A DNA stretch of 37,066 nt from Octopus sinensis. Taxonomy: Eukaryota. Shown one piece after another: positions 1 to 35,597 of this stretch. The position numbers were made by a program, and so were the translations under genes. Location: positions 1 through 37,066 of the forward strand of contig NW_021835913.1 in assembly GCF_006345805.1 (NCBI RefSeq), written 5' to 3'. The notes under the pieces were generated by a model that did no database searches, was not told the DNA's origin, and saw only the letters and a program-made list of their open reading frames with translations. The stretch's first letter is position 1, and each line of letters begins with the position of its first letter.

Positions 1-45
1 CTAGTTAAGCGACGGCTTTGAGGCTGCCTCGTTGTATCATATATA

Positions 46-260
46 TTTCTTTACTACCCACAAGGGGCTAAACACAGAGGGGACAGACAAAGGGATTAAG
101 TCGATTACATCGACCCCAGTGCGTAACTGGTACTTAATTTATCGACCCCGAAAGGATGAAAGGCAAAGTCGACCTCGGCGGAATTTGAACTCGGAACGCA
201 ACGACAGACGAAATACGGCTACGAATTTCGCCCGGCGTGCTAACGTTTCTACCAGCTCGC
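46..260 (-). mobile_element. tRNA-derived SINE, family A1 (Meta-domain-like body, tail ending GTAAAGAAA/ATAAAGAAA)
   Basis: Minus strand reads GCGAGCTGGTAGAAACGTTAGC (A-box-like) ... GAGTTCAAATTCC (B-box-like), then TTTGCCTTTCATCCTTTCGGGGTCGATAAATTAAGTACCAG. Near-identical copies at 17915, 25214, 27059, 27672 and 27936. The Meta assignment is from memory of the domain consensus. Confidence 0.85.
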
Positions 261-268
261 ATCAGACG

Positions 269-470
269 GCGAGCTGGTAGAATCGGGGAAAATACTTAGC
301 GGCGTTTCGTCCGTCTTCACGTTCTGAGTTCAAATTCCATGGAGGTCGACTTTGCATTTTCATCATTTCGGGGGTCGATGAAATAAGTACCAGTTGAGCA
401 CTGGGGTCGATGTAAATGACTTAACTCCTTCCCCCGAACTTGCTGGTCTTGTGCCAAAATTTGAAACCAT
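269..470 (+). mobile_element. SINE family A2 (same head and body as A1, alternative tail ...CTTGTGCCAAAATTTGAAACC)
   Basis: GCGAGCTGGTAGAATC head, GAGTTCAAATTCC B-box and Meta-like core. The tail recurs at about 3350-3400 and 35390-35420. Confidence 0.8.
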
Positions 471-844
471 TATATAAATGAATTTCAAAGCAGAAAGTCC
501 CAGACGTATGTACGTCACAGCAAGAAGCACAAATAACGGCATCGATATCCAAACTCTCAGGCACCAAAAACTAATCACAGAGATGGCTACGGAAATGAAA
601 TAAATTGAAAGCAACACTAATGGTGGTGCCCCAGCATGGTCTCGGTCAAAAGGCCAGAACTGTTAAAAGAATAACAGAAAAAAATAAAAGGTTACTCTAT
701 AAAATGTTTTTTTTTTTAGTCGTTTAGTGAAGTGGATGAGCCGTCCTCAATGACCTTTTCAGGATCTCCGTGTTGTGGAAGCGAGGCAGGAATGTATCGC
801 CAAACTTAAGACCTGATACAGATTCCTGTAAGGAACTTATAATG

Positions 845-2847: not shown

Positions 2848-3262
2848 ACCCTCAGCTTACTCAAGAAATGAGATTATTGTTGTAAAGGTTGAGCATAGCG
2901 ATGTAGAAAAATCTCGATTTTTAAAAGTTTGCAGATCTTTCGTCTACAAAGTTTGTAAGGAGTTAGAGACTGAAGCTGGAAACGTATCACCAGTATCAAA
3001 GCATAATAAACATTCTAAACGCCCTGAAATCATCAGAACACCTGAGTTTATCCAGTAAGTTCAAGAGACCATTTATTACAATCCCAGAAAGTGCATGAGG
3101 TCAATTGCAAAAGATCGCCATTTGTCGGAAGGAACAGTCAGAAATGTTGTCCACGAAGACATCAGATTTAAGTGTTATATGATGAGGAAAGGTCAATTTG
3201 AAAGAAAAAGCTAAAGAAAATCACTACATCAGATCTGAAAAAGACTCTTAAACAAACTGAAA
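2848..3262 (+). mobile_element. Tc1/mariner transposase N-terminal (DNA-binding) remnant
   Basis: Manual translation: VKVEHSDVEKSRFLKVCRSFVYKVCKELE...RPEIIRTPEFIQ*VQETIYYNPRKCMRSIAKDRHLSEGTVRNVVHEDIRFKCYMMRKGQF. The pattern is HTH-like and contains a stop. Confidence 0.75.
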
Positions 3263-3482
3263 ATTTCAACAGAAGAAGATTTGATTTGGTTTTTCTGAAA
3301 CGAGAGAAGCTTCAACCAAGATCAAAAAGTTAACAGAAGAAATGTAATCAACCTACCCTCTCCCGAAATTTCTGGCCTTGTGCCAAAATTTGAAACCAAT
3401 ATTTATATGCGTTGCAAGTAGACTCCTCTGATGTGAAATCAATAAGTTTCGAAAATCGATTAAGGCTGAGCATCCTTTTATA

Positions 3483-7907: not shown

Positions 7908-8165
7908 ATTTTTTAATTTAATTTTAATTTAATTTTTATTGGCTCAAAAAGCAAAAGCAAGGCCATGTAGGGGGACATGGAGTTATGTACAGGGAGGATG
8001 GTCATATAAAGAGCTCAGGCCATTTCCGGTCAAGAGAGACTTTGAATCGAGCGGTCGTCGGCGTCTTCACTATGTCGTCCGGCAGCTTATTCCACGGATC
8101 CGCAACCCGGACGGAGAAAGCCCCTCTCCTTCGATTGAGATGAAATCGTCGTGGATAGAGCTTTT
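7908..8165 (-). mobile_element. CR1-clade LINE 3' end
   Basis: Same sequence as 20180-20430 and 23317-23650, with an (AAATT)n tail. Confidence 0.85.
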
Positions 8166-8868
8166 CGCTCTAATAGATAGAGCTATTAAATTTTAGGAAC
8201 GAACTAATCTCGTTATTGTACACAGTATAAAGTAACTATATATAGACATGTATCATTGTACCTTATTCACTCTTCCTCGTTTACTCTTTTTTCATTTTTT
8301 TTGTCTTTTTTCCGTTTCTTTCGCACTTTTCTTTCCTGCTTTAACTATCTCTGTATATATTAACAGTGTTTTACTTCAATATCATTATGCATTGCAGGGT
8401 ATATGAACATCTACTAATTTTATAATCGAACTATATACTGAAAATGCGTTTCAATATGCAAATCTGCCAATCCGATTTACGTAAGCCTTCAGTAATAATG
8501 CATTTATAAGCATTATTACTGTTCATAGAACAGTTGAACGTGCAGTATAGAAATCAGTGTAGATCTTTCAATCAAGTTCTAGACAATGTTTGATATAAAT
8601 AGCTATTTTCTATAAATTGTCTTCTCAGGCAAAGGAAAGAGGGTGGTTTTGTTCTCTGAAGAGTGAACAACAAACTTTGAGGCAAGAGAGGACAGTCTCC
8701 TACATATTTCTGGGTACAAAGAGAATAAGATGCATTCACAACAGTTAATGACTACACAGTGAAATACGTACAAAGTAAAGCTGAACTGCATTCAACTTCG
8801 TCCTGTGTTTAAATATTTATTGATGTGTTTGCGTATCTACGTACATATAACTATTTCTGTCTGTCTGC

Positions 8869-9296
<428 letters not shown>

Positions 9297-11467
9297 GCCG
9301 TGCCGGGCCGGACCATCCATGACAACCTCCACCTGATGCGCTACATCATAGACAGGGTAGTTAACGAACCTGGCATGGGTGGGGCGCTGATCAATTTGGA
9401 TCAATCGAAAGCTTTCGATAGGGTGGACCATCGATACTTGGAGGCAGTCCTCAGAGCGGCTGGCTTCGGTCCTGTCTTCTGCGGCTGGATAGCCGCTTTG
9501 TACAGAGGCATCCGTTCGGCAATTCGCGTAAATAGACATCTATCGAGACCTTTCGACATCGCACGTTCGGTCCGTCAGGGATGCCCCCTCTCGTCGATTC
9601 TATACGTATTGACTCTCAAGCCATTATTGCGGAAGCTGGCAACTCTGAGGGGCATCCCGCGAGAACTGGGATGCGGGACGAGCGTGTCTGCATACGCGGA
9701 CGACGTCACCGTCATAGTGTCTAGCCACGAGCACATCGAGCAGGTCGGCGAGACACTGAAAAACTACGAAGCGGTGACAGGAGCGAAAATCAACCGGGAA
9801 AAGTCAGTGGGCTTGCGACTAGGCACCTGGAGAAGCAAGCCCATGCCGTCCACCAGCGCCTCCGTCGTCGGACGCTGGACCGACGGTCCGGTCGAGTTGC
9901 TCGGGGTCTGGTTCGGTCCGGACCTCCAAATGGAGAAGAACTGGAACGAGATAACGAGTAGGGTGGTCACTCTCGCCCGGCAATGGGCCGAGAGGAAACT
10001 GTCCCTAAAAGGTCGGGCGGAGGTGGCGAACACGTAAATCGCGTCCGTCATCTACTACCGCCTGACCGTCGTGCCTTGTCCCGACCCTACCATCACCAAA
10101 CTAGAACGCATTCTCTTTCGCTTCTTGTGGAAAGGATGCGTCCCGATGGTCAGGCGATCCATTTGCTGTCAACACCCGTTAAAAGGAGGACTGGGCATGC
10201 CGTGGTTGATGATGTGCAGACACGCGCTGAGACTGCGACATCTCAGGCTCGTCGCAGACGACGAACTGGTGTGGTCGCCGTTTGTGAGGCACGCTTTCCC
10301 GCAACTCGTCTCCTTGACCGAACTGCAGTCGTGGATCAAAAAGAGGCCGAGGACGGGCGATGGCACCGCGAGTGTCGCGTTGCTCTCAAGCAACTCTGCC
10401 GTCCTGGGTCGACCTTGAGTGACTCCATCACAACCAAAGCATTCTATAGGGGATTAGTGGAGGGGAGGTACGACGACGAGCTCGGGGCGAACCTGGACGT
10501 CGACGAGGAATACCTGACCCGCCTGTTCGGGACGACTTTCGGGCCAGGGCCCATGGACAACTTCCAGCGATCCCTGGCCTGGCAGTACTACCGAGAAGCG
10601 CTACCCGTTCGGGATAAGCTCTACAGACACGGCTCGAGAAACACGGGGCCGACCTGCCCAAGATGCGGTCAGAGCGACGAAACCGTTCTGCACGCACTCG
10701 TGCAGTGTCCAACAATTTCCGACCTGTGGGCTTATGTCGAACAACTGCTGTCACGTGTGGGACGAGTTGGTTTATCAGCTGAGTCTATCGTCAATATTGT
10801 CACGCCTCCTTCCTTCAAACGGGAAGGAAGAGCTATTTTCATCATCCTTGTGGCTATGGCGAAAGGATGTATCTGGTGGACGCGTCTGATAGGATTGGAG
10901 ACAAACACTTTCCTCTCTGGTCAATCTCTCATCAACTTCTTCAAGTACCACTTGAAAAGGAAAGTGAGAGTAGAGAGGCAAGTTTTGTCTAGCGAATGTT
11001 TTAAAAAAAGATGGGTGAATGTAACAAGGATGGCACGTATGAATGACGAAGCAACCTTGAGCATAATCCTATGAACCCAGAAATTGAAAACAGAGGGTTA
11101 CCCACTTGCAAACAAATGTGGCAACATATAACAATATTGACCGAGGTTACCGTGGTCTTTTTCGTAGGCTTTTCTTCCCACGGATAAACCTTATCTGCTT
11201 TCCCCTTTACACCGTACATCATGACACTGTGATACACGATCCCTATTGATCGTTTTTTTTTAATCTGCCCCTTTTTTCCTCTTTTCTCTTCTTTTTTCTT
11301 TTTTCTTTTCTTTTGTTTCTCTTCCTTTTTTTCTTTTTTCTTTTTTCCCTTTTACGATCCCTTTTGATCGAAAACCTACGCCACTTTTTTTCTCATCCCC
11401 CAAAAGAAAAGCTCTACCTTATAATTTGTCCCATCTGTGTGCTGCCCTGTGTGGCCAATAAAGAAAC

Positions 11468-11470
<3 letters not shown>
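9297..11470 (+). mobile_element. 5'-truncated Tx1-clade (L1 group) LINE: RT, C-terminal zinc-binding motif and 3' UTR
   Basis: AVPGRTIHDNL, LDQSKAFDRVDH, VRQGCPLS, AYADD, GGLGMP and CPRCGQSDETVLHALVQC motifs. One nonsense codon (10035-10037) and one frameshift (about 10360); ORF ends at 11074; AATAAA at 11457-11462. Confidence 0.93.

Positions 11471-11513
<43 letters not shown>
11471..11513. repeat. (TCTA)n microsatellite, 3' flank of the Tx1
   Basis: Direct reading. Confidence 0.95.
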
Positions 11514-11921: not shown

Positions 11922-12361
11922 GTGGAGTAGTAACATTTTGATAGAATCGAGATAAGTATACGTTTGTGATGGTGGGATGATGGAGTTGAAGTGACCGTAT
12001 TCGAGTATTAGACGCTGTGGGATCGGGGGTAGCTGTACAGGGGGTTGAGGTGGTGTTGGTACCTTACTGTTGTGTAGTAGTGGTGGTAGTGTAGTAGAAC
12101 TCGAAGTAGTAGTAGTAATAGTAGTAGTAGTAGTAGTAGTAGTAGCAGCAGCAGTAGCAGCGGTAGCATTAGTAGTAGCAGCAGTAGCGTTAGTAGTAGT
12201 AGTAGTAGTAGTAGTAGCAGCAGCAGTAGTAGCGGTAGTAGAAGTAGTAGTCGTAGTAGTAGTAGCAGTAGTAGCGTTGGTAGTAGTAGTAGTAGTAGTA
12301 GTAGCAGCAGTAGCAGCGGTAGCGTTAGTAGTAGCAGTAGTAGCGTTAGTAGTAGTAGTTT

Positions 12362-12394
<33 letters not shown>

Positions 12395-12582
12395 AAGTAG
12401 TATGGTGACTATACACCGATAGTGGCGGGATCGAAATGTAGTACGATAGTAGTGTCGAAGCGAGTGCACTGCAGTAGTGGTAGCAGTACTCGTAGTGGTA
12501 CCATAGTAACTGTAATGAAGCTGTAGCAGTAACGTCGTGGTGGTTGAGGTAGCTATAGTGTCGAGGTGACTGTAATATATCT

Positions 12583-12620
<38 letters not shown>

Positions 12621-12803
12621 TGTTGTAGTAGTGGTGGCAGTAGTAGTGGTTGTAGTAGTAGTTGTAATAGCAGCAGCAGCAGCGGCAGTAGTAATAGTAG
12701 TAGTAGTAGTAAAAACAGAAGTAGCAACAAGAGCAGTATTACTAGCGCATAGTAAGAGTGACGGTAGTAGTATCGGTAGTAGTAGTGATGATAGTAGTAG
12801 TGA

Positions 12804-12837
<34 letters not shown>

Positions 12838-13042
12838 TGTGACGGTAGTAGTAGTTGTTGTAATGGTAGTATTAGTAGTAGTAGTGATGGTAGTAGTAGT
12901 TGTTGTTGTAATGGTAGTAGTAGTAGTAGTAGTAGTAGTAGCAGCAGCAGCTGTAGTAGTAGTAGTAGAAGTAGTAGTAGCAGCAGTAGCGTTAGTAGTA
13001 GTATTAGTGGTGGTAGTAGTAGTAGTAGTAGCAGCAGCAGCT

Positions 13043-13085
<43 letters not shown>

Positions 13086-13293
13086 TGGCGCTGCCGAGGT
13101 GACTATACGGTAGTGGTGATAGTGTTGGTGGTGGTAGTTGTGGTAATAGTAAATGTCAAAGTGACTATACTGCAATAGTGAGCACAGTGCTGTCGATACG
13201 ACTGACTATATAGACTACAGAACTTATACTACGATAGTAGCTTATAAAAGTATTAGTATTAGCATTAGTGGTAGTAGTAGTAGTAGTAGTGGC

Positions 13294-13335
<42 letters not shown>

Positions 13336-13354
13336 GGTGGTGGTGGTGGTGGTA

Positions 13355-13391
<37 letters not shown>

Positions 13392-16295
13392 CAGCATTAA
13401 TGGTGTGGTAGTAGTAGTAGTAGTAGTAGTAGTAGTATTAATAGTAGTAGTAGTAGCATTAGTGGTTTTCGTATTAGTATTAGTAGTAGTAGTAGTGTTG
13501 GTTGGCGCCGGTGCTGGTGGTGGCGGCCGTGGCGGTGGTGGCAACGGTGGTGGCGGCCGTGGCGGTGGTGGCATCGAGGAAATTCTACAGAGAAGAGGGT
13601 TTCTGTTGAAGTGTTTCGCTCGGCCTGAGAGACGCCACAAGAGAGAAACTTAAGCCTGACTGTTTTGGCCTCGATGACGTCATCGGGATGTGAGGAGCCG
13701 ACTTGGCTTACGTCATAGAAAGGCGGCGGTGGCGGCGGTGGCGGCGGTGGAAACGATAGCGTTTTATAGTGGTGGTGGTGGTGGTGGCGACGGCGGCGGT
13801 GGTGGTGGTGGTGGATAATGGCGGCGATGGTGGTGCCGATGGGTCCTGCCGATATTTGTCGGTGATGCTGGTTTCTTGATGGTGGTTTATTATATGTGAT
13901 GCTGACGATGTTGTCGTTGTTGTTGGTGGTGGTGGTGGATGGGTAGTGGTTATGGTGAGGGTTGATGGTGATGGTGGAGTGGTGGTGGTGATGGTGATGG
14001 TGATGGTGGTGGTGGTGTTGTTGAGGGTGATGTGATGGTGGTGGTGGTGGTGATGGTGATGGTGATGGTGGTGGTGGTGGTGAGGGTGATGGTGATGGTG
14101 GTATTGGTGATGGTGATGGTGATGGTGATGGTGGTAGTGGTGGTGATGGTGATGGTGATGGTGGTGGTGGTGGTGGATGGTGATGGTGATGGTGGTGGTG
14201 GTGGTGGTGATGGTGATGGTGATGGTGTAGTGGTGATGGGTGATGGTGATGGTGATGGTGGTAGTGGTGATGGTGGTGATGGTGATGTGGTAGTGGTGAT
14301 GGTGATGGTGTGATGGTGGTAGTGGTATGGTGAGGTATGGTGATGGTGGTATGGTGGTGGTGATGGTGATGGTGATGGTGGTGGTGGTGGTGGTGAGGTG
14401 ATGGTGATGGTGGTGTGGTGGTGGTGAGGGTGATGTGATGGTGGTATGGTGATGTGAGGGTGATGGTGATGGTGTAGTGGTGATGGTGAGGGTGATGGTG
14501 ATGGTGGTAGTGGTGATGGTGTGGTGATGGTGATGGTGGTAGTGATGATGGTGATGTGATGGTGGGGGGTAGTGGTGATGGTGAGGTGATGGTATGGTGG
14601 TAGTGGTGTGGTGATGTGATGTGTGGTGGTGGTGGTGGTGAGGGTGATGGTGATGGTGGTGGTGGTGGTGGTGAGGGTGATGGTGATGGTGGTAGTGGTG
14701 ATGGTGAGGGTGATGGTGATGGTGGTAGTGGTGATGGTGATGGTGATGGTGATGGTGGTAGTGGTGATGGTGAGGGTGATGGTGATGGTGGTGGTGGTGG
14801 TGGTGATGGTGATGGTGATGGTGGTAGTGGTGATGATGATGGTGATGGTGATGGTGATGGTGGTAGTGGTGATGGTGATGGTGATGGTGATGGTGGTAGT
14901 GGTGATGGTGAGGGTGATGGTGATGGTGGTAGTGGTGATGGTGATGGTGATGGTGATGGTGGTAGTGGTGATGGTGATGGTGATGGTGATGGTGGTAGTG
15001 GTGATGGTGATGGTGATGGTGATGGTGGTGGTGGTGGTGGTGAGGGTGATGGTGATGGTGATGGTGGTAGTGGTGATGGTGATGGTGATGGTGATGGTGG
15101 TGGTGGTGGTGGTGAGGGTGATGGTGATGGTGATGGTGATGGTGGTGGTGGTGGTGGTGAGGGATGGTGATGGTGATGGTGATGGTGGTAGTGGTGGTGG
15201 TGATGGTGATGGTGATGGTGGTGGTGGTGGTGGTGAGGGTGATGGTGATGGTGGTGGTGGTGGTGGTGATGGTGATGGTGATGGTGATGGTGATGGTGGT
15301 AGTGGTGATGGTGATGGTGATGGTGATGGTGGTAGTGGTGATGGTGATGGTGATGGTGATGGTGGTAGTGGTGATGGTGATGGTGATGGTGATGGTGGTG
15401 GTGGTGGTGGTGAGGGTGATTTCCTTGATGGTGATGTTGATGTTGCTTGGTAGTGATGTTCGTGACGATGGAGATGATAATAATGGCGGTAGTGGTATGG
15501 GGACGACGGTGGGGGGTGGATATGGTGATGATGTTGATGGTGGTGGTGGTGGTGGTGGTTGTGGTGATGGTGATGGTGGCGGTGGATATGGTGATAAGGT
15601 AGATAATGTTGATGGTGGTGGTGGTGGTGGTTGTGGTGGTGATGACAGCAGTCATAGTGGCGGTGGTAGTGGTGGTAATGGAGGCGGTGGCGACGGTGGT
15701 GGTGGTGTAGGACGTAATGGTGATGATGATGGTGGTGGTGATAACGCTAATGACAGTGGTGGCGGTAGTGGTGGTGGTGGTGGTGGCAGTGGTTTTGGTT
15801 GTCGTGGTGGTGGTGGTGGTCTTGAGGCTGGAACATTACGGCGGTGCTGACGGCGTCGGTGGAAGTTGCGATAATGGTGGCGATGACGGAGGTGATAATG
15901 ATGATAGTGATGGTGGTGACGACGATGGTGGCGCTGATGGTGGTGGTGGTGGTGGTGGTGATGGTGATGGTGGCGGTGATGCTGTTGTTGGAAATGTTGC
16001 TTGATGCGCCACTGGTGATGACAGAGATGATAATGCTAGTGACAGTGCTGAAGGTGGTGATGGTGCTATATAAGGTAGTGGTAGTGGTGGTGGTGGTGGT
16101 GGTGGTGGTAGTGGTGGCTGGTTCAAGAGATGTATCAAGGCTGGTGGTGGTGGTTGCGACGGCGATGGTTTTGACGAATGGTATGACAGTGACGGTGGGG
16201 TAGACGGCAGCTGTGACGCCAATAGTGATTATGAAAGAAAGTATAGTTTGATAGTAACCTTAGTGGTAGTAGAGCTGGTGGTGGTGGTAGTGTAT
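11700..16295. repeat. Compound G/T-rich trinucleotide domain: (GTA/GCA)n grading into (GGT/GAT)n with 24-30-bp higher-order units
   Basis: Direct reading. The top strand is strongly C-depleted, and GGTAGT(GGTGAT)nGGT units repeat over about 14690-15400. Confidence 0.95.
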
Positions 16296-17914: not shown

Positions 17915-18137
17915 TTTCTTTATTACTCACAAAGGGTTAAACATAGAGGGGACAAACAAAGACAGACAAAGGGATTAAGTCGATTACATCGACCCCAGTG
18001 CGTAACCGGTACTTTATTTTTCGACCCCGAAAGGATGAAAGGCAAAGTCGACCACGGCGGAATTTGAACTCGGAACGTAACGACAGACGAAATAAGGCTA
18101 CGCATTTCGCCCGGCGTGCTAACGTTTCTGCCAGCTC
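17915..18137 (-). mobile_element. SINE family A1, full length
   Basis: Matches 46-260. Confidence 0.85.
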
Positions 18138-20179: not shown

Positions 20180-20690
20180 TTTTTTTTTTTTAATTTAATT
20201 TTTATTGGCTCAAAAAGCAAAGGCAAGGCCATGTAGGGGGACATGGAGTTATGTACAGGGAGGGTGGTCATACAAAGAAAACAGGCCATTTCCGGTCAAG
20301 AGAGACTATGGACCGAGCGGTCGTCGGCATCTTCATTATCTCGTCCGGCAGCTTATTCCACGGATCCGCAACCCGGACGGAGAAAGCTCCTCTCCTTCGA
20401 TTGAGATGAAATCGTCGCAGATAGAGCTTTTTGGAGTGACCCCGCAGCCCACGCTCCGGAGCAGGAGTGAAGAACAGCTCTTTCGAGAGGTTACACTTTC
20501 CGCTTATGATGTTGTGAGCAAGAATGAGATCACCACGGCGTCGTCGTTTATCGAGAGAATAAGGGTCGAGCGTCTTCAGCCTTTCTTCATAAGACAAATG
20601 TTTGAGACCAAGAACCATGCGGGTAGCCAACTTCTGAACTCTTTCGAGATGATGTATTTCTTTGAGGAGATAAGGAGAAAAGTGGCGATA
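20180..20690 (-). mobile_element. CR1-clade LINE 3' fragment
   Basis: ORF 20268-20729: [22 protein letters not shown]...SYEERL...RRRRGDLI...GLRGHSKKL...[13 protein letters not shown], a typical CR1 ORF2 C-terminus. Confidence 0.9.
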
Positions 20691-20714
20691 TATGAATGGT
20701 GTTTGGTAAAATGT

Positions 20715-21300
20715 GTAGAAAATGCACACTTTCCAACAAAAACTGTTTGGAGCGATGAGGCTACATGTAAATTAAGTATCTCGGTTAACCACAGCGATAG
20801 CAGCAACTAGGAGACTTGGGAATCCGCACATTACGTAGGAACATCATGTTAATTTGTCAGACGATAGAAAATGGGGTTGCTTATCATCAACCGGATTAAT
20901 TGGATCGTTCTTTTGTGACAGTACGGTGACTGGTCCTATTCAATTGAATCCGCGGTGGCAATCGGTCAAAGCAAGCATTCATGAAGACTTTGAAGATGTG
21001 GAGTTTATTTCCAGCATCACGGAGCACCCCAACAATACTATAATAATGTAAGGGCCCATCTTGTTAAGATTTTGCTAAACAAGTGGAATGGACGAAGAGG
21101 CTCAGTAGACTACACATCGCGTTCACCGGACTTCTCGTCATTAAACTTTTCTTTCTGAGGAGACTTCGAAGATAAAGTTTACGGTACAAAAACAGGCGAC
21201 CATTGACACATTGAACGTTGCCATTAAACAAAAATGCATACAAACACCGCTGAAATATTTCTTGATGTTTGCGATTCAAAATGTGCTTGTTTTCAGCTGT
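20715..21300 (+). mobile_element. Degenerate Tc1/mariner (DD41D-like) transposase
   Basis: [31 protein letters not shown] and SRSPDFSSL motifs across frameshifts. Confidence 0.7.
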
Positions 21301-21815: not shown

Positions 21816-22892
21816 AAGGGTTTCCCCAAAAATTTGATATCATTTGAGATGTAAATATCACAGAAACTACATTGTCAAAGCAAATGAAACTAAACAGGCT
21901 TAAGGTTGACCAACATAAAATCTATCCTTCCAGATTTGAATGAGAAATTCAAAAGTATGTGGATTCCATGAACAATTTCACAAATGTTCAATATGCGTAC
22001 CACCTGAGACACGGTGCAAGTCGGTAGTCCAGCTCATCCCAAGACGCTGCAGCATGTCTTGGGTAACAGTCTCCAGTGCCGTAGTGACTCTCTGCTTGAG
22101 TTCCTCTAGGTTTGCAGGGAGAGGGGGACATAGACCAGGCCTTTCACATAGCCCCAGAGAAAAATATCGCTAAGTGTTGGGTCAGGAGAACGTGGCGGCC
22201 ATTTCAACAGCACGTTGTCTTCATCACCAGCACGCCCGATCCATCTCCATCGCAGATTGTCATTGAGATAAGCCGGCACAGTGAGCTTTCAATAAGGTGA
22301 AGCATCGTCCTGCTGAAAAATGAAGTCTTCATGTTCATTTGCAATGAGCTCATCCATTAGCAAGTTCTGAAGCATTTGCAGATAAACATCGCCAGTCACA
22401 TTTCCCTCAAAAAAAAAAAAAACGGGCCATAAAGATGCTTCTTGGAGATGGCGCAGAACACATTCACTTTTGGTCAGCCCTTCTTGTGCTCAGCTTTTCT
22501 TCGCCCCAAATATAAACATTATGCTTATTAATTTTGCCATTCGTATGAAACGTGGCTTCATCACTGAAAGCAAGACGTTCATTGAACTCGGCTTCTTCAA
22601 GTTTCTCTTGCATTTCAACAAAGAATTGTTTGCGTTTTCGATTGTCATCTGCTGTTATGGCCTGAACGAGCTGCAGCTTGTAGAGTTTCATTAGCAAGCG
22701 CTTTTTCAGGACGCGCCAAACTGTCGTTGGAGGAATTTGGGATTCCAGACTTGTTCTTCTTATGGACTTTTTGGGGCTTCGCAAGAGTTTTTGGCGAACC
22801 CGCTTGACCGTCTCTTCCGATGTTAGTGATCGTACGGATCCTTTTGCCCCGCCCAGACAGCCTTCCTCTTTGAATTTTTTTGTGCCATGTCC
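21816..22892 (-). mobile_element. Tc1/mariner transposon, 5'-truncated, DDxD catalytic domain with 46-residue spacing
   Basis: FSDEATFHTNG (ORF 22464-23009), FQQD...WPPRSPDPTLSDIFLWGYVK. The terminus TA|AAGGGTTTCCCCAAA at 21816 has a duplicate TA|CAGGGTTTCCCCAAA at 22934. Confidence 0.85.
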
Positions 22893-23015
22893 AATTTGGT
22901 TAACGGAAACTATGTGAAAACACGTTATATATACAGGGTTTCCCCAAAAATTTGATATCATTTGAGATGTAAATATCAAAGAAACTACATAGTGAAAGCA
23001 TGTATACATAGATAT

Positions 23016-23308
23016 GGAGGCGCAATGGCCCAGTGGTTAAGGCAGCAGACTCGCGGTCGTAGGATCGCGGTTTCGATTCCCAGACCGGGCGTTGTGAGTA
23101 TTTATTGAGCGAAAACACCTAAAGCTCCACGTAGCTCCGGTAGGGGTGGTGGTGATCCCTGCTGTACTCTTTCACCACAACTTTCTCTCACTCTGTCTTC
23201 TATTGGCCTGCTCGCTTAGCCAGCGGGGTGGCGTCATTGAAGGCTAAAACAATGACCAGCGATGTGTAGTAACATATGATGGCCTGGTCGGTCACGTGAT
23301 CACGTGAT
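23016..23308 (+). mobile_element. SINE family C
   Basis: Matches 18173-18464. Confidence 0.8.
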
Positions 23309-23316
23309 ATATATAT

Positions 23317-23650
23317 ATCATAAGCGGAAAGTGTAACCTCTCGAAAGAGCTGTTCTTCACTCCTGCTCCAGAGCGTCGGCTGCGGGGTCACTCCGAAAAG
23401 CTCTATCTGCGACGATTTCATCTCAATCGAAGGAGAGGGACTTTCTCCATCCAGGTTGCAGATCCGTGGAATAAGCTGCCGGACGAGATAGTGAAGATGC
23501 CGACGATCGCTCGGTTCAAAGTCTCTCTTGACCGGAAATGGGCTGAACTCTTTGTATGACCACCCTCCCTGTACATAACTCCCTGTCCCTCTACATGGCC
23601 TTGTTTTTGCTTTTTGAGCCAATAAATATTAAATTTAAAAAAATTAAATA
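23317..23650 (+). mobile_element. CR1-clade LINE 3' fragment
   Basis: Reverse complement of 20180-20510. Confidence 0.85.
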
Positions 23651-24919: not shown

Positions 24920-24981
<62 letters not shown>

Positions 24982-24982
24982 C
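24638..24982. repeat. Compound trinucleotide microsatellite (TTC)n(TTA)n(TCA)n(TTA/TTG)n
   Basis: Direct reading. Confidence 0.95.
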
Positions 24983-25213
24983 GTTATTCAAATAAAAATT
25001 GACTGCCCCTCCCTGCCAAAAAGAGGGTAGCTGAGGGTGGAGAGGGAAATATTGCCTTGTAGCAAGTTTGTTGAAAGTTGGGTGAATGTTGGAAGAATGG
25101 CCAGTATGATAGGACCAATTCTGAGCGTGCACCTATAAAAAGGGAATTAAAGAAGGCTCTAGTTGAGCAGGGAACCATGGTTTTTCTGGTTTTTTCCACG
25201 AGGACCTTAAAGC

Positions 25214-25350
25214 GCCTCCCTTTCATCCTTTCGTGGTCGATTAAATAAGTACCAGTTACGCACTGGCGTTGATGTAATCGACTTAATCCCTTTGTCTGTC
25301 CTTGTTTGTCCCCTCTATGTTTAGCTCCTTGTGGGCAATAAAGAAATAAG
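25214..25350 (+). mobile_element. SINE family A1, 5'-truncated
   Basis: Core plus tail ...TTGTGGGCAATAAAGAAATAAG. Confidence 0.85.
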
Positions 25351-25419: not shown

Positions 25420-25840
25420 TTTGAGAGGGTTGGAGTAATCGATACCATTGGCCTTAGTATTTGAGTGGTACTTTTCTTTATCAATCCCGAAAGAATGAAA
25501 AACAGAGTTGACCTCATAGAAATGTGATCTCAGAGCGTAGGGAGAGCCATGACAAAAATAGCAAAACGTCTTTTTACAATTCTCTGATGATTCTTCAAAC
25601 ACGTTTACTTCGTGTATTTCTCAATATTGTTTATAATTTAGGCACAAGGCCATTAAATCTGAGGGAATGGAAATAATCGATACCATTAACCCTAGTACTA
25701 CATTGATACTTTATTTTATTGATCCCGAAATGATAAAAGAAAAACCGACCTCGGCGAGATTTGAACTCGGAATGTAAAAATGCCGCAACAAATACAACAA
25801 AGTAATTTTTCCGAATTTCTCAGTTCTGCCAGTTAGCCGC
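25420..25840 (-). mobile_element. Two degenerate family-A SINEs
   Basis: GTTGACCTC / CCGACCTCGGCGAGATTTGAACTC and CCCGAAA core remnants. Confidence 0.55.
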
Positions 25841-26511: not shown

Positions 26512-27281
26512 ACTAGCAGTTTTGAGGGGAGGGAGTCAATCGGTACCATTGAACCCAGTACTTGACTGGTATTTCATTTTATTAAGCTCGAAAGGAGGAA
26601 AAGCAAAGTTGATGCCAAAGGAATTTGAACTCGGAATGTACAGAGCTGGAAGAAATGCCGCAAGGTATTTTTTCCTAACGCTGTACCGATTCTGCCTCCT
26701 AGTCGCCTTCGTTTCTGATTTAGGATACAAAGCCAACAATTTGGAAGGGCGGGGGTCACCACCTATTCTTGTAGATGACTTGGTATTTCATTTATTCAAA
26801 AATCCCGAAGGGTTACGAAATGAAGTTGTGGCCCGGTTACATGCAACCGGGCCACAACCTGCCCAAATATCCTTTTCTACTAAGCACAAGGCCTTAAATT
26901 TTGGGGGAGGGGCTAGTCGATTAGATCGACCACAGTACACAACTGGTACTTAATTTATCAACCCTGAAAGGATGAAAGGCAAAGTCGACCTCGGCGGAAT
27001 TTGAACTCAGGACGTAAAAACAGTCGAAGCATTTCACCCGGCGTGCTAACGCTTCTTATTTCTTTACTGCCCATAAGGGGCTACACACAGAGGGGGAAAA
27101 CTAGGACAGACAAACGGATTAAGTCCATTATATCGACCCCAGTGCGTAACTGGTACTTATTTAATCGACCCCGAAAGGATGAAAGGCAAAGTTGACCTCG
27201 GCGGAATTTGAACTCACAACGTAACGGCAGACGAAATACTGCTAAGCATTTCGCCCGGCGTGTTAACGTTTCTCCCAGCTC
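26512..27281 (-). mobile_element. Cluster of four family-A SINEs of different ages (about 26512-26707, 26718-26830, 26871-27056, 27059-27281)
   Basis: Recurrent GGAATTTGAACTC and ACTGGTACTT core motifs, all on the same strand. Confidence 0.7.
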
Positions 27282-27671
27282 ACTGACTTCTGACCCAGAT
27301 ATTCTGCTTCTTGTATGTTCAAATTGGTCAGATCTAACATCACACACCTTACCTACAGTGTCATTCTAAAAATAAGTCACAAGATAATACATGGTTAATT
27401 CAAAACAATGAGAATATATAAGCATCACATTTAGTAGAATAATCTGAATACTAGAGGTTTATAAAAAAGGTCAAGCTGGGGCAAATTTTTCGATGCTCTA
27501 ACGGTTCTGTCAGCTTGTCGCCTTATGTATATCATCAAATAATTATAAATATGCCGTCTTCGTAAATGATTTGGGTGGTATCAACAAGATTTGGCTAAAA
27601 CAAATTCTTCGATTCGCTAACAACTCTGTCAGCTGGTCGCTTTATGTGTATCGTCAAATAGTTTTAAATAT

Positions 27672-27893
27672 ATTTCTTTATTGCCCACAAGGGGCTAAAC
27701 ATAGAGGGGACAAACAAGGACAGACAAATGAATTAAGTCGATTACATCGATCCCAGTGCGTAACTGGTACTTAATTTATCGACCCAGAAAGGATGAAAGG
27801 CAAAGTCGACCTCGGCGGAATTTGAACCCAGAACATAACGGCAGACGAAATACGGCTACGCATTTCGCCTGGCTTGCTAACGATTCTGCCAGG
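27672..27893 (-). mobile_element. SINE family A1 (tandem unit 1)
   Basis: Full length; bounded by AAATAGTTTTAAATAT repeats. Confidence 0.88.
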
Positions 27894-27916
27894 TCGGCCT
27901 TTTGGCTAAGATCAAG
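27894..27916 (+). pseudogene. U2: U2 snRNA 5' fragment (nt 9-31)
   Basis: TCGGCCTTTTGGCTAAGATCAAG is a 23/23 match to the conserved metazoan U2 5' sequence. Confidence 0.85.
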
Positions 27917-27935
27917 GTGAAATAGTTTTAAATAT

Positions 27936-28160
27936 TATTTCTTTATTGCCCACAAGGGGCTAAACATAGAGGGGACAAACAAGGACAGACAAAGGGATTA
28001 AGTCGATTACATCGATCTCAGTGCGTAACTGGTACTTAATTTATCGACCCAGAAAGGATGAAAGGCAAAGTCGACCTCGGCGGAATTTGAACCCAGAACG
28101 TAACGGCAGACGAAATACGGCTACGCATTTCGCCCGTCGTGCTAACGATTCTGCCAGCTC
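27936..28160 (-). mobile_element. SINE family A1 (tandem unit 2)
   Basis: Near-identical to unit 1. Confidence 0.88.
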
Positions 28161-28180
28161 GGCCTTTTGGCTAAGGTCAA
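28158..28180 (+). pseudogene. U2: U2 snRNA 5' fragment (nt 8-30, one mismatch)
   Basis: CTCGGCCTTTTGGCTAAGGTCAA, 22/23 match. Confidence 0.8.
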
Positions 28181-28920
28181 CGTGAAATAGTTTTAAATAT
28201 ATCGTCTTCGACAATAATACGGAGTTGATGGTGGTATCCACCAGATTTGATTTTCATAGACCCGTTTCATATATGAATTCGTGTGCGGTTATACATTAAG
28301 ATGTACTGTAAGACAACTCAGTCTCCACTAGATGGCGTTACAACGAATACGCAATTAAAATTGCTGCGTGCATTAAGTAATGTTTCTTACGCTTACCGTA
28401 CACATCGGTTGAGAAGGAAACACGAAAAGTTTAAACACGCTTGTAACACTATTTATAGTATCTCAGACCATCGTAATTTTCGCATGAAGAGGCGAAACAA
28501 GGTATCGTTTTCCTATAAGCCGACGGAAGGAAATAGACCGAAAAACAAACAAAACAAAACAAGACAAAACGAAACGAAAAAGAAAACCACAAATGGAGGG
28601 AGTGCACTTATTGCCAAGAACACACATACATAATTGTATGTGTGTGTGTGTGTGTGAATGGGTAAATGCAATTGTATAAAAATGCGAATGCATGGTGGTG
28701 TTGATGTAATGGTACCAGCGTTGGTGGTGGTAGTCGTGATGGCGGTCGTGGTAATAGGAGTTAATCGCAGTGGCGTTATCTGCCATGTTTATACATAAGA
28801 GTATTTATGATATACATGTGTGTGTAGCTTGGTAGCATGTTTTCTACTTCAATAGACATTATTATATATATATGTATTTACCAATGCATCATGTTATATA
28901 TATATACATATACATACACA

Positions 28921-35389: not shown

Positions 35390-35597
35390 GGTTTCAAATT
35401 TTGGCACAAGGCCAGTAATTTCGGGGCAGTGGGTAAGTGGATTACATCAATCCCAGTGTTTAACTGGTACTTATTTTATCGACCACGAAAGGATGTAAGG
35501 CAAAGTCGACTCTGGCGGAATTTGAAATCAGTACGTGAAGACAAAGTGCCACTAAGCATTTTGTCCGACTTGCTAACAGCTTTCCCAGCTTGCTGCC
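35390..35597 (-). mobile_element. SINE family A2, diverged
   Basis: Tail GGCCTTGTGCCAAAATTTGAAAC plus Meta-like core. Confidence 0.75.

What the first reader, a model, noticed from the sequence alone, without database searches (positions are those of the whole stretch)
11425..11466. The Tx1 LINE 3' end matches the tail of the dominant SINE family: candidate Tx1-SINE partnership
Seen: Tx1 11425-11466 (TTTGTCCCATCTGTGTGCTGCCCTGTGTGGCCAATAAAGAAA) aligns without gaps at 34/42 to the family A1 SINE tail (reverse complement of 27673-27714, TTTGTCCCCTCTATGTTTAGCCCCTTGTGGGCAATAAAGAAA). Both elements end at the same AATAAAGAAA. Established: SINEs borrow the 3' recognition tail of their partner LINE, well documented for L2, CR1 and RTE, whereas L1-group elements are usually regarded as relaxed, poly(A)-dependent mobilisers. 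Inference: a tail-stringent Tx1 lineage mobilises this SINE family. Family A2 has the same head and body but a different tail, which implies partner switching.
Basis: partly seen in the sequence, partly recalled or inferred. Interest (0 to 1): 0.78.

Follow-up and report, generated by a model that had tools for sequence, protein, structure and literature searches.

The report
Octopus SINE borrows an L1/Tx1-type LINE tail
The last ~50 bases of a truncated L1/Tx1-type jumping gene in this octopus window are that gene family's own conserved 3' end, and the window's commonest short repeat (a CORE-SINE) carries the same ending, so this LINE family is the likely engine that copies the SINE; this is a new example of a well-known kind of partnership.

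Summary
Window 11425-11466 matches the SINE A1 tail at 34/42 without gaps (BLAST E 4e-6 in the window). Both end at AATAAAGAAA with no poly(A).

The segment is not a stray SINE fragment. Independent copies of the same LINE family carry the same terminal module: Argonauta hians L003, and octopod-like contigs L005, L006, L010 and L001. Between otherwise unalignable 3' UTRs, this module is the only conserved stretch.

The shared region is about 53 nt. SINE-to-LINE identity (75-81%) falls within LINE-to-LINE identity (69-80%). CR1-like 3' ends in the window do not match (z about 0, against z 9-15 for the LINE).

In Argonauta, two different SINE types carry the Argonauta variant of the tail.

The A2 tail matches the 3' ends of a sister lineage of the same LINE clade, seen in a cuttlefish and two unidentified contigs (z 5-13). 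Both tail types share a small hairpin with loop CUUGU and a compensatory stem change.

The LINE has an L1-type architecture (APE, RT, CCHC) and its best solved-structure hit is human L1 ORF2p. Assignment to Tx1 is only inferred. Mobilisation is also inferred, not shown.

Verdict: a real, probably undescribed member of the known SINE-LINE tail-sharing class.

The parts
9300..11466 (+). LINE1: a 5'-truncated, inactivated copy of an L1/Tx1-group LINE. It holds the ORF2 RT and C-terminal CCHC domains, the stop codon at 11072-11074 and the 3' UTR at 11075-11466.
   Evidence: Pfam RVT_1 (E 6.5e-22) and zf-RVT (E 6e-8). tblastn to relatives P0004, P0002 and L003 shows an in-frame stop at 10035-10037 and a frameshift near 10353-10355. 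Best solved-structure hit is human L1 ORF2p, E 3e-19.
11414..11466 (+). Conserved 3'-terminal tail module of the LINE. It ends in AATAAAGAAA with no poly(A).
   Evidence: 34/42 to the SINE A1 tail. 33/41 to the Argonauta LINE tail and 38/55 to L010. It is the best or only conserved stretch between LINE 3' UTRs.
11444..11455 (+). Candidate small hairpin in the tail: GCC-CUGUGU-GGC here, GCCC-CUUGU-GGGC in SINE A1, UGGC-CUUGU-GCCA in SINE A2.
   Evidence: Across 13 tails, 82.7% of cells pair against 64.6% in shuffles. One stem pair is G-C in 7 sequences and C-G in 6. The folding energy is not better than shuffled sequences, so support is weak.
8869..9296 (.). (CTAT)n microsatellite, 111 copies, forming the 5' flank of LINE1.
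   Evidence: TRF; junction read.
11469..11513 (.). (TATC)n microsatellite forming the 3' flank of LINE1, so the LINE sits inside one array.
   Evidence: TRF. An independent copy of the same subfamily, L010, also ends in (CTAT)n.
27671..27896 (-). SINE A1 copy (CORE-type, tRNA-like head).
   Evidence: 95.6% identical to the window A1 consensus.
27936..28161 (-). SINE A1 copy, in tandem with the previous one.
   Evidence: 97.3% identical to the consensus.
27057..27281 (-). SINE A1 copy, directly abutting an A2 copy.
   Evidence: 92.0% identical to the consensus.
17915..18137 (-). SINE A1 copy.
   Evidence: 94.6% identical to the consensus.
44..261 (-). SINE A1 copy with a 10-nt deletion in the tail.
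   Evidence: 92.1% identical to the consensus.
25015..25348 (+). LINE2: the last 35 codons of a related ORF2 (25031-25135, stop 25136-25138), an 80-nt UTR, then 25219-25348, which is 95% identical to the last 130 nt of SINE A1. This is either a LINE-SINE chimera or a LINE subfamily with a SINE-type end.
   Evidence: tblastn, sequence, blastn. The downstream flank holds no remainder of a LINE UTR.
284..473 (+). SINE A2 copy: same head and body, but the alternative tail ...CCCCGAAATTACTGGCCTTGTGCCAAAATTTGAAACC.
   Evidence: Further A2 copies are at 26884-27056 (-), 35390-35593 (-), 25626-25778 (-), 26526-26670 (-) and 3342-3402 (+, 5'-truncated).
20185..20729 (-). CR1-like LINE 3' end, used as a negative control for the tail match. 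A second copy lies at 7925-8196 (-).
   Evidence: The ORF has the CR1-type C-terminus. Its 3' end does not match the A1 or A2 tails, z 0.1-1.5.

Best explanation
The window comes from an octopod. At 9300-11466 lies a dead, 5'-truncated copy of an L1-group LINE (APE + RT + CCHC), most likely what repeat libraries call L1-Tx1.

Its last ~50 nt are the family's own conserved terminal module. The module has a pyrimidine-rich leader, a small hairpin with loop CUUGU, and the box CAAUAAAGAAA. It is followed by a microsatellite, not poly(A).

The octopus CORE-SINE subfamily A1 consists of a tRNA-like Pol III head, a CORE body and a copy of this LINE module.

Inferred mechanism: the LINE's ORF2 protein recognises this 3' module on its own RNA. 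It starts target-primed reverse transcription at or just after GAAA. SINE RNAs that carry the same module are accepted in trans. This would be a 'stringent' SINE-LINE partnership within the L1/Tx1 group.

Subfamily A2 carries the homologous module of a sister lineage of the same LINE clade. The SINE has therefore exchanged tails between related LINE partners.

Shown: homology, terminal position, conservation across LINE copies and genera, and absence of poly(A). Inferred: recognition by ORF2p, trans-mobilisation, a functional hairpin, and Tx1 clade membership.
For: 1. The match is real and far above chance.

2. The same module ends independent LINE copies. These are Argonauta hians L003 (...GTCCCCTCTATGTTTTTGCCCTTGTGGCTAATAAAAGAAATA + (ATT)n), L005, L006 and L010. 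L001 is colinear with LINE1's UTR up to the point where the contig breaks off inside the tail.

3. Between LINE 3' UTRs the best alignment lies at the extreme 3' end, so the module is an island of conservation.

4. SINE-to-LINE tail identity is 75-81% over 42-61 columns. LINE-to-LINE identity is 69-80%.

5. In Argonauta, at least 12 copies of a different tRNA-headed SINE and 2 CORE-SINE copies end in CGGCCCTTGTGGCTAATAGAGAAATC. They share 'GGCTAAT' with the Argonauta LINE, whereas the Octopus LINE and SINE have 'GG[GC]CAAT'.

6. The A2 tail matches LINE 3' ends L007 (z 12.6), L008 from Acanthosepion pharaonis (z 6.1) and L009 (z 5.1). In L007 a non-autonomous element with the same motif sits at the LINE's 3' junction, flanked by a target-site duplication.

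7. The stem flanking the CUUGU loop keeps pairing while its sequence changes between tail types.

8. None of the 6 SINE or 5 LINE ends has an A-tail. This argues against poly(A)-dependent mobilisation.

9. CR1-like 3' ends in the window do not match.

10. The architecture is L1-type: RVT_1 + zf-RVT in the window; APE + RT + zf-RVT in L003 and L007; best solved-structure hit human L1 ORF2p.
Against: There is no functional evidence of any kind.

LINE1's own tail is only 81% identical to the SINE tail, and LINE1 is dead. The actual source subfamily was not found, unless LINE2 at 25015-25348 represents it.

LINE ends sit in or next to microsatellites ((CTAT)n, (ATT)n), whereas the SINE copies in the window do not. 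If the LINE endonuclease were strictly microsatellite-specific, its SINEs should share that target.

The hairpin is only 3-4 bp. Its folding energy is no better than shuffled sequence. Its covariation may reflect one or two events inherited by two clades.

The octopod LINE with an A2-type tail was not found; the A2 match is to a cuttlefish and to unidentified contigs.

RTE, R4/Dong, L2 and other LINE clades that are abundant in octopus are not in the window and could not be compared.

Tx1 membership was not tested against reference sequences.
Confidence: 0.72

Rival explanations
1. The direction is reversed, or the match is local. Either the 42 nt at 11425-11466 is a SINE-tail fragment that landed at the end of this LINE copy, or the LINE family captured its end from the SINE.
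For: LINE2 (25015-25348) shows that LINE and SINE sequences can be joined. There the SINE-like part includes CORE sequence, which must come from a SINE.
Against: The module ends at least 5 independent LINE copies from at least two genera, at the same terminal position. LINE1's upstream UTR is colinear with L001 into the tail. LINE tails share diagnostic bases with each other (GGCCAAT) that SINE A1 lacks (GGGCAAT). A homologous hairpin module ends sister LINE lineages that are only 45-53% identical in protein, including one in a cuttlefish. Unrelated SINE heads and bodies carry it. This pattern fits a LINE-to-SINE origin.
Confidence: 0.05
2. The tail is LINE-derived but is not what drives mobilisation today. 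The SINE is copied by another LINE (for example RTE, R4/Dong or CR1) or in a relaxed, tail-independent way, and the shared tail is a historical relic.
For: SINE copies in the window are not in the microsatellites where the LINE copies sit. LINE1 is dead and only 81% identical in the tail. Published work stresses RTE, R4 and CR1 activity in octopus (PMC9115989, PMC13282606).
Against: The genus-specific variant is shared by LINE and SINEs in Argonauta. At least four structurally different non-autonomous elements have acquired the module. The module is the only conserved part of the LINE UTR. No A-tails are present. L1-Tx1 families are among the recently active LINEs in O. vulgaris (PMC13282606). 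The CR1-like ends in the window do not match.
Confidence: 0.15
3. The similarity is chance or convergence, for example a shared polyadenylation signal plus pyrimidine-rich sequence.
For: Part of the match is AATAAA. The CR1-like 3' end looks loosely similar by eye.
Against: E 3.7e-6 within the window. z = 9-15 for three LINE copies, against z about 0 for CR1-like ends under the same scoring. 15/15 identity (GTCCCCTCTATGTTT) between SINE A1 and the Argonauta LINE lies outside the AATAAA box.
Confidence: 0.01

Closest known systems
Stringent SINE-LINE pairs sharing a 3' tail (for example eel UnaSINE1/UnaL2, tortoise Pol III SINE/CR1; Ohshima 1996, Kajikawa & Okada 2002, reviewed in PMC3747384)
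   Same: The SINE's 3' ~50 nt is homologous to the extreme 3' end of a LINE 3' UTR in the same genome. There is no poly(A). A short repeat or microsatellite follows the LINE end. There is a candidate stem-loop with a conserved loop. The extent and identity of the homology (42-61 nt, 75-81%) lie in the range used to call partnerships in bivalves (35-61 bp, 72-95%; PMC11481361).
   Different: The partner here is an L1-group (probably Tx1) LINE, not L2, CR1 or RTE. The hairpin is much smaller (3-4 bp) than the L2 stem-loops shown to bind ORF2p (PMC4176376). No assay exists.
L1-clade stringent pairs in plants and algae (maize/sorghum ZmSINE2/3 with LINE1-1_ZM; Chlamydomonas SINEX-3_CR with L1-1_CR; PMC3472496)
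   Same: [quoted passage not shown] A stem-loop shows compensatory changes with conserved loop bases. Such pairs are used to argue that stringent recognition exists within the L1 group.
   Different: Those pairs are from green plants and mostly end in poly(A). This case is in an animal (cephalopods), has no A-tail and ends in a microsatellite.
SINEU mobilised by Tx1-Mar in crocodilians (Kojima 2015, PMC4494074)
   Same: A Tx1-group LINE is proposed as the mobiliser of a SINE. Tx1 elements have target preferences that include microsatellites. A U2 snRNA-derived fragment is associated with SINE copies in this window (noticed in passing).
   Different: That partnership was inferred from a shared insertion target and shared U1/U2 heads, not from a shared 3' tail. 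Here the evidence is the tail, and the SINEs do not visibly share the LINE's microsatellite context.
Octopus CORE-SINEs OR1/OR2 (Ohshima & Okada 1994; cited in PMC4758252 and PMC4824008)
   Same: tRNA-derived octopus SINEs with a CORE-type central domain. The window's A1/A2 family has the CORE-like ...CTTTCATCCTTTCGGGGTCGATAAATTAAGTACCAG... segment. That resemblance to CORE is my own recollection, not a tool result.
   Different: I could not retrieve the OR1/OR2 sequences, so identity with A1/A2 is untested. No partner LINE for them is named in the papers I could search.

Membership tests
SINE-LINE pair with shared 3' tail (stringent type) | The SINE 3' end is homologous to the LINE 3' UTR end, above chance | tested here: met
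   34/42, E 3.7e-6, z 14. 44/54 to the Argonauta LINE and 46/61 to L005.
SINE-LINE pair with shared 3' tail (stringent type) | The homology lies at the extreme 3' terminus of both elements | tested here: met
   Both end at AATAAAGAAA, followed by flank or microsatellite. The same holds in L003, L005 and L010.
SINE-LINE pair with shared 3' tail (stringent type) | The tail belongs to the LINE family, not to a single locus | tested here: met
   Found in 5-6 independent LINE copies from at least 2 genera. It is the only conserved UTR stretch. No genome-wide consensus could be built.
SINE-LINE pair with shared 3' tail (stringent type) | No other LINE clade matches as well | tested here: inconclusive
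   CR1-like ends in the window have z about 0. RTE, R4/Dong and L2 are absent from the window and could not be fetched.
SINE-LINE pair with shared 3' tail (stringent type) | A conserved stem-loop in the tail | tested here: inconclusive
   A 3-4 bp stem with a conserved CUUGU loop. 82.7% of cells pair, with a G-C/C-G switch. The minimum free energy is not better than shuffles.
SINE-LINE pair with shared 3' tail (stringent type) | Concurrent activity and tail-dependent trans-mobilisation | not testable with these tools
   This needs genome-wide divergence landscapes and a retrotransposition assay.
L1 group / Tx1 clade of non-LTR retrotransposons | APE endonuclease + RT + C-terminal CCHC in ORF2 | tested here: met
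   The window copy has RVT_1 + zf-RVT (CX2CX8HX4C). Near-full-length relatives L003 and L007 have Exo_endo_phos + RVT_1 + zf-RVT.
L1 group / Tx1 clade of non-LTR retrotransposons | The RT is closest to L1-group RTs | tested here: met
   Best solved-structure hits are human L1 ORF2p (E 3e-19, 280 aa), ahead of R2 proteins (E 2e-15 to 1e-10, 137-170 aa). No CR1, RTE, I or Tx1 structures exist for comparison.
L1 group / Tx1 clade of non-LTR retrotransposons | The RT groups with Tx1 references (Xenopus Tx1L, Keno, Kibi, Koshi) in a phylogeny | not testable with these tools
Indirect support: Tx1 is the only L1-group clade reported in molluscs and O. vulgaris (PMC10294476, PMC13282606).
L1 group / Tx1 clade of non-LTR retrotransposons | Target-specific insertion (many Tx1 families target microsatellites or multicopy genes) | tested here: inconclusive
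   LINE1 has (CTAT)n on both sides. L010 is followed by (CTAT)n. L003 and L005 are followed by (ATT)n. There are too few copies to separate a target preference from a 3' repeat tail.
CORE-SINE superfamily | tRNA-derived head with Pol III boxes plus a CORE central domain | not tested
   ARAGORN and Rfam give no tRNA call. The box-like motifs and the CORE resemblance were judged by eye and from memory. The literature states that octopus OR1/OR2 are CORE-SINEs (PMC4758252, PMC4824008).

The most novel reading that the evidence does not exclude
Coleoid cephalopods may harbour an L1/Tx1-group LINE clade that has kept stringent, hairpin-dependent recognition of its own 3' end since before octopods and decapodiforms split. 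Diverging tail variants of this one clade, not RTE or CR1, would then have driven the large SINE expansions of octopus genomes. Different SINE heads and bodies would have repeatedly captured whichever tail variant was active. That would make it the first tail-defined SINE partner of a Tx1-type element in animals.
Probability: 0.45. Interest if true: 0.62.

Novelty: new member of a known kind. Interest (0 to 1): 0.5.

Why it matters
SINEs make up roughly 4-12% of octopus genomes. They have been linked to genome reshuffling and neural transcript content (PMC12988792, PMC13282606). Recent annotations still list almost all of them as 'unclassified SINE', and none of the papers I could search names a partner.

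Pinning the main CORE-SINE tails to one LINE clade says which reverse transcriptase to study. It allows SINE and LINE activity histories to be compared. It also adds an animal case to the question of whether stringent 3'-end recognition is ancestral in the L1 group, an argument so far based on plants and algae (PMC3472496).

It would also improve repeat classification in cephalopods, where these elements could be labelled as Tx1-dependent SINEs.

Tried and rejected
1. Protein-guided scans of metagenome contigs and genome contigs for more LINE copies found nothing (searches failed on the alignment).

2. DNA-pattern scans found nothing either. I searched for the LINE2 UTR/SINE junction in metagenome contigs and for the tail in genome contigs. 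So I could not test whether LINE2 is a multi-copy subfamily.

3. I tried to settle Tx1 versus L1 from database names. The word-index search, the full HMMER search of representatives and the cluster look-up returned hundreds of relatives, but none with a name.

4. I looked up the window's own ORF to identify the source record. Nothing was on record. P0006 was not on record either.

5. CR1 as the tail source is rejected. A by-eye resemblance of the CR1-like 3' end disappears under scoring (z about 0).

6. LINE2 as a simple nested SINE insertion is rejected. No LINE UTR remainder lies downstream. A multiple alignment of UTR 5' parts did not resolve whether LINE2's 80-nt UTR is colinear with LINE1's.

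7. Thermodynamic support for a tail structure was not found: z between -1.4 and +0.8.

8. I did not pursue target-site duplications of the SINE copies, because none was clear by eye.
Full report
**1. Observation**

Window 11425-11466 (+) and the reverse complement of 27673-27714 are identical at 34 of 42 positions without gaps. Both end in AATAAAGAAA.
- A blastn of the SINE against the whole 37-kb window recovers this pair at E = 3.7e-6.
- The last 20 nt as a pattern, with up to 3 mismatches, occur 7 times against 0.01 expected. The 7 are six SINE copies and this site.

**2. The two elements**

*The LINE.* Upstream of the 42 nt lies a 5'-truncated LINE copy, here called LINE1 (9300-11466).
- It has an RT domain (RVT_1, E 6.5e-22) and a C-terminal CCHC domain (zf-RVT).
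- Alignment to relatives shows one in-frame stop (10035-10037) and one frameshift (near 10353-10355).
- ORF2 stops at 11072-11074, and the 3' UTR runs to 11466.
- The copy sits inside a (CTAT)n array: 111 copies at 8869-9296 and 11 copies at 11469-11513.
- The nearest relatives come from Argonauta hians, Octopus bimaculoides and octopod-like contigs in metagenome or read assemblies. The window is therefore octopod DNA.

*The SINE.* It has 6 copies with the 'A1' tail and 6 with an alternative 'A2' tail.
- The A1 copies are 92-97% identical to their window consensus.
- By my recollection of the CORE domain, and by literature stating that octopus OR1/OR2 are CORE-SINEs (PMC4758252, PMC4824008), this is a tRNA-headed CORE-SINE. 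I could not retrieve OR1/OR2 to test identity.

**3. Is the tail part of the LINE family?**

Yes. I fetched DNA around relatives of the ORF2 C-terminus.

| Copy | Source | 3' end |
|---|---|---|
| L003 | Argonauta hians, near-full-length element (ORF1-like, APE, RT + zf-RVT) | ...GTCCCCTCTATGTTTTTGCCCTTGTGGCTAATAAAAGAAATA + (ATT)4 |
| L005 | octopod-like contig | ...GGGCCCTTGTGGCCAATAAAAGAAATC + (ATT)n |
| L006 | octopod-like contig | ...CTCTTGTGGCCAATCAACACAC |
| L010 | degenerate copy of LINE1's subfamily | ...GTGAATAATAAAAAAGAAT + (CTAT)n |
| L001 | octopod-like contig | UTR colinear with LINE1's until the contig breaks off inside the tail |

- When the 3' UTRs are compared pairwise, the best alignment between LINE1, L003 and L005 is always at the extreme 3' end. 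The rest is unalignable or low-complexity.
- SINE-to-LINE tail identity is 34/42 (LINE1), 44/54 (L003) and 46/61 (L005). That is as high as LINE-to-LINE identity, 69-80%.
- The shared region is therefore about 53 nt.
- The SINE tail falls within the diversity of the LINE family's own tails. In its 5' half (GTCCCCTCTATGTTT, 15/15) it is closer to the Argonauta-type LINE than to LINE1.

**4.

The window holds CR1-like LINE 3' ends at 20185-20729 (-) and 7925-8196 (-).
- Under identical scoring they give z about 0 against both SINE tails. The L1-type LINE ends give z = 14, 15 and 9.
- The second condition, that the 42 nt be absent from the LINE consensus, is contradicted by section 3.
- RTE, R4/Dong and L2 ends could not be tested.

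**5. Independent support from other SINEs and genera**

- The Argonauta locus L003 contains at least 12 copies of a different, shorter tRNA-headed SINE and 2 CORE-SINE copies. All end in CGGCCCTTGTGGCTAATAGAGAAATC.
- Three of them form a head-to-tail array immediately 5' of the full-length LINE.
- The Argonauta LINE and the Argonauta SINEs share GGCTAAT. The Octopus LINE and SINE have GG[GC]CAAT.
- So structurally unrelated SINEs carry the local variant of this LINE's tail.

**6. The A2 tail**

A1 and A2 are colinear up to ...GATGTAATCGACTTA and then differ. The A2 tail is CCCCCGAAATTACTGGCCTTGTGCCAAAATTTGAAACC.
- It matches the 3' ends of LINE relatives that are 45-53% identical in protein. 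These are L007 (z 12.6), L008 from the cuttlefish Acanthosepion pharaonis (z 6.1) and L009 (z 5.1).
- These relatives have APE + RT + zf-RVT and 3' UTRs of about 750 nt ending ...GGCCTTGTGCCA[AC]ATTT...CAATAAATAA.
- In L007 a ~390-nt non-autonomous element with the same motif sits right at the LINE's 3' junction, flanked by a 14-nt target-site duplication.
- Both tail types therefore look like diverged versions of one ancestral LINE module. The 'partner switch' is between lineages of one LINE clade.
- I did not find the octopod LINE with an A2-type end.

**7. Structure**

All tails contain a 3-4 bp G+C stem around a conserved loop: GCCC-CUUGU-GGGC in A1, GGCC-CUUGU-GGCC in L005, and UGGC-CUUGU-GCCA in A2.
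- On 13 tails, 82.7% of cells pair, against 64.6% in shuffles and 17-48% when the partner is slid.
- One pair is G-C in 7 sequences and C-G in 6.
- This may reflect a single inherited event, and I derived the structure from these same sequences.
- Folding energies are not better than shuffles.

I treat the hairpin as a candidate only.

**8. Mechanism**

None of the LINE or SINE ends has an A-tail, although the module contains AAUAAA. Copies end 4-8 nt after it.
- This fits reverse transcription starting at a defined internal position on a recognised 3' module. It does not fit priming on poly(A).
- The most likely reading is a stringent SINE-LINE partnership, as established for L2, CR1 and RTE partners and proposed for some plant and algal L1-clade LINEs (PMC3747384, PMC3472496).
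- Mobilisation itself is inferred.

**9. Clade**

The architecture (APE + RT + CCHC) and the best solved-structure hits place the LINE in the L1 group. Human L1 ORF2p scores E 3e-19 over 280 aa, ahead of R2 proteins.
- No named Tx1 reference could be obtained.
- Published mollusc surveys list Tx1 as the only L1-group clade, and L1-Tx1 is among the recently active LINEs of O. vulgaris (PMC10294476, PMC13282606).
- The microsatellite context of the copies resembles Tx1 families such as Kibi and Koshi (PMC4494074), but the sample is too small.

'Tx1' is probable, not shown.

**10. A second LINE-SINE junction in the window**

At 25031-25135 lie the last 35 codons of a related ORF2. An 80-nt UTR follows, and then 25219-25348, which is 95% identical to the last 130 nt of SINE A1, including CORE sequence.
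- No LINE UTR remainder follows, so this is not a simple nested insertion.
- It is either a template-switch chimera (RT starting on SINE RNA and jumping to LINE RNA) or a LINE subfamily that carries a SINE-type end.
- Either would fit the same RT handling both RNAs.
- I could not find further copies to decide.

**11. Novelty**

SINE-LINE tail sharing is textbook. L1-clade examples exist in plants and an alga. A Tx1-SINE link was proposed in crocodilians from shared targets, not from shared tails (PMC4494074). Bivalve CORE-SINE partners are CR1, CR1-Zenon, L2 and Nimb (PMC11481361).
- I found no paper naming a partner LINE for octopus SINEs. Repbase and subscription papers were not searchable.
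- I rate this a new member of a known kind, of moderate interest.

Noticed in passing
window 8869-9296 and 11469-11513; L010:1320-1342; L005:2019-2105; L003:6187-6200: LINE copies of this family end in, or sit inside, microsatellites. LINE1 has (CTAT)n on both sides. An independent copy of the same subfamily (L010) is also followed by (CTAT)n. The L003/L005 type is followed by (ATT)n. This could be microsatellite-targeted insertion, as in the Tx1 families Kibi and Koshi, or a subfamily-specific 3' repeat tail.
   Followed up: partly
window 25015-25348 (+): The ORF2 end and 80-nt UTR of a related LINE are fused to the last ~130 nt of SINE A1. An (ATT)n array (24920-24982) lies about 35 nt upstream. 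This is either a template-switch chimera or a LINE subfamily with a SINE-type tail.
   Followed up: partly
window 27897-27937 and 28162-28205 (+ strand): The spacer between the two tandem SINE A1 copies is a U2 snRNA 5' fragment (CTCGGCCTTTTGGCTAAGATCAAG...), antisense to the SINEs. The Rfam RF00004 hits are weak (E 0.11 and 0.48), but the alignment covers U2 stem-loop I. This is curious because some Tx1 elements (Keno) target U2 genes and SINEU has U2-derived heads.
   Followed up: partly
window 27400-27670 (-): Tandem units consisting of a diverged ~65-nt SINE head plus a ~60-nt spacer (CGAAGACGRYATATTTAWAAYTATTT...) continue the array of full SINE copies. It looks like a SINE-derived satellite-like array.
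   Followed up: no
window 11238-11370: LINE1's 3' UTR holds a T/C-rich low-complexity block (11253-11355) bracketed by direct repeats: GATCCCTATTGATCG at 11238-11252 and GATCCCTTTTGATCG at 11356-11370. The relative L001 has a single copy of the repeat and no block.
   Followed up: partly
L003:1-357 (Argonauta hians): Three head-to-tail copies of a ~155-nt tRNA-headed SINE lie directly 5' of a near-full-length LINE whose tail they share. At least 9 more copies are scattered in the 10.8-kb locus.
   Followed up: partly
L007:5475-5865: A ~390-nt non-autonomous element ending in CCCCGGCCTTGTGCCAAACATTG... is inserted exactly at the 3' junction of a LINE with the same motif. It is flanked by the duplication TACCCCTCAAAATC.
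   Followed up: no
window 7925-8196 (-), 20185-20810 (-), about 23200-23640 (+): Three fragments of one CR1-like LINE family end in ...GAGCCAATAAAAATTAAATTAAA. Each carries a long antisense ORF beginning [12 protein letters not shown].
   Followed up: partly
window 12000-16200: A long low-complexity, repeat-rich stretch has extreme GC skew (0.59-0.92). It gives long spurious ORFs rich in P/S/H/T/L runs on both strands.
   Followed up: no
window 3100-3341 (+) and 22464-23009 (-): These look by eye like remnants of a DNA-transposase (mariner-type) coding sequence; no domain search was run. The first is interrupted by a 5'-truncated SINE A2 tail at 3342-3402.
   Followed up: no
window 44-261 (-) and 284-473 (+): An A1 and an A2 SINE copy lie head-to-head, about 20 nt apart, forming a long inverted repeat.
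   Followed up: no
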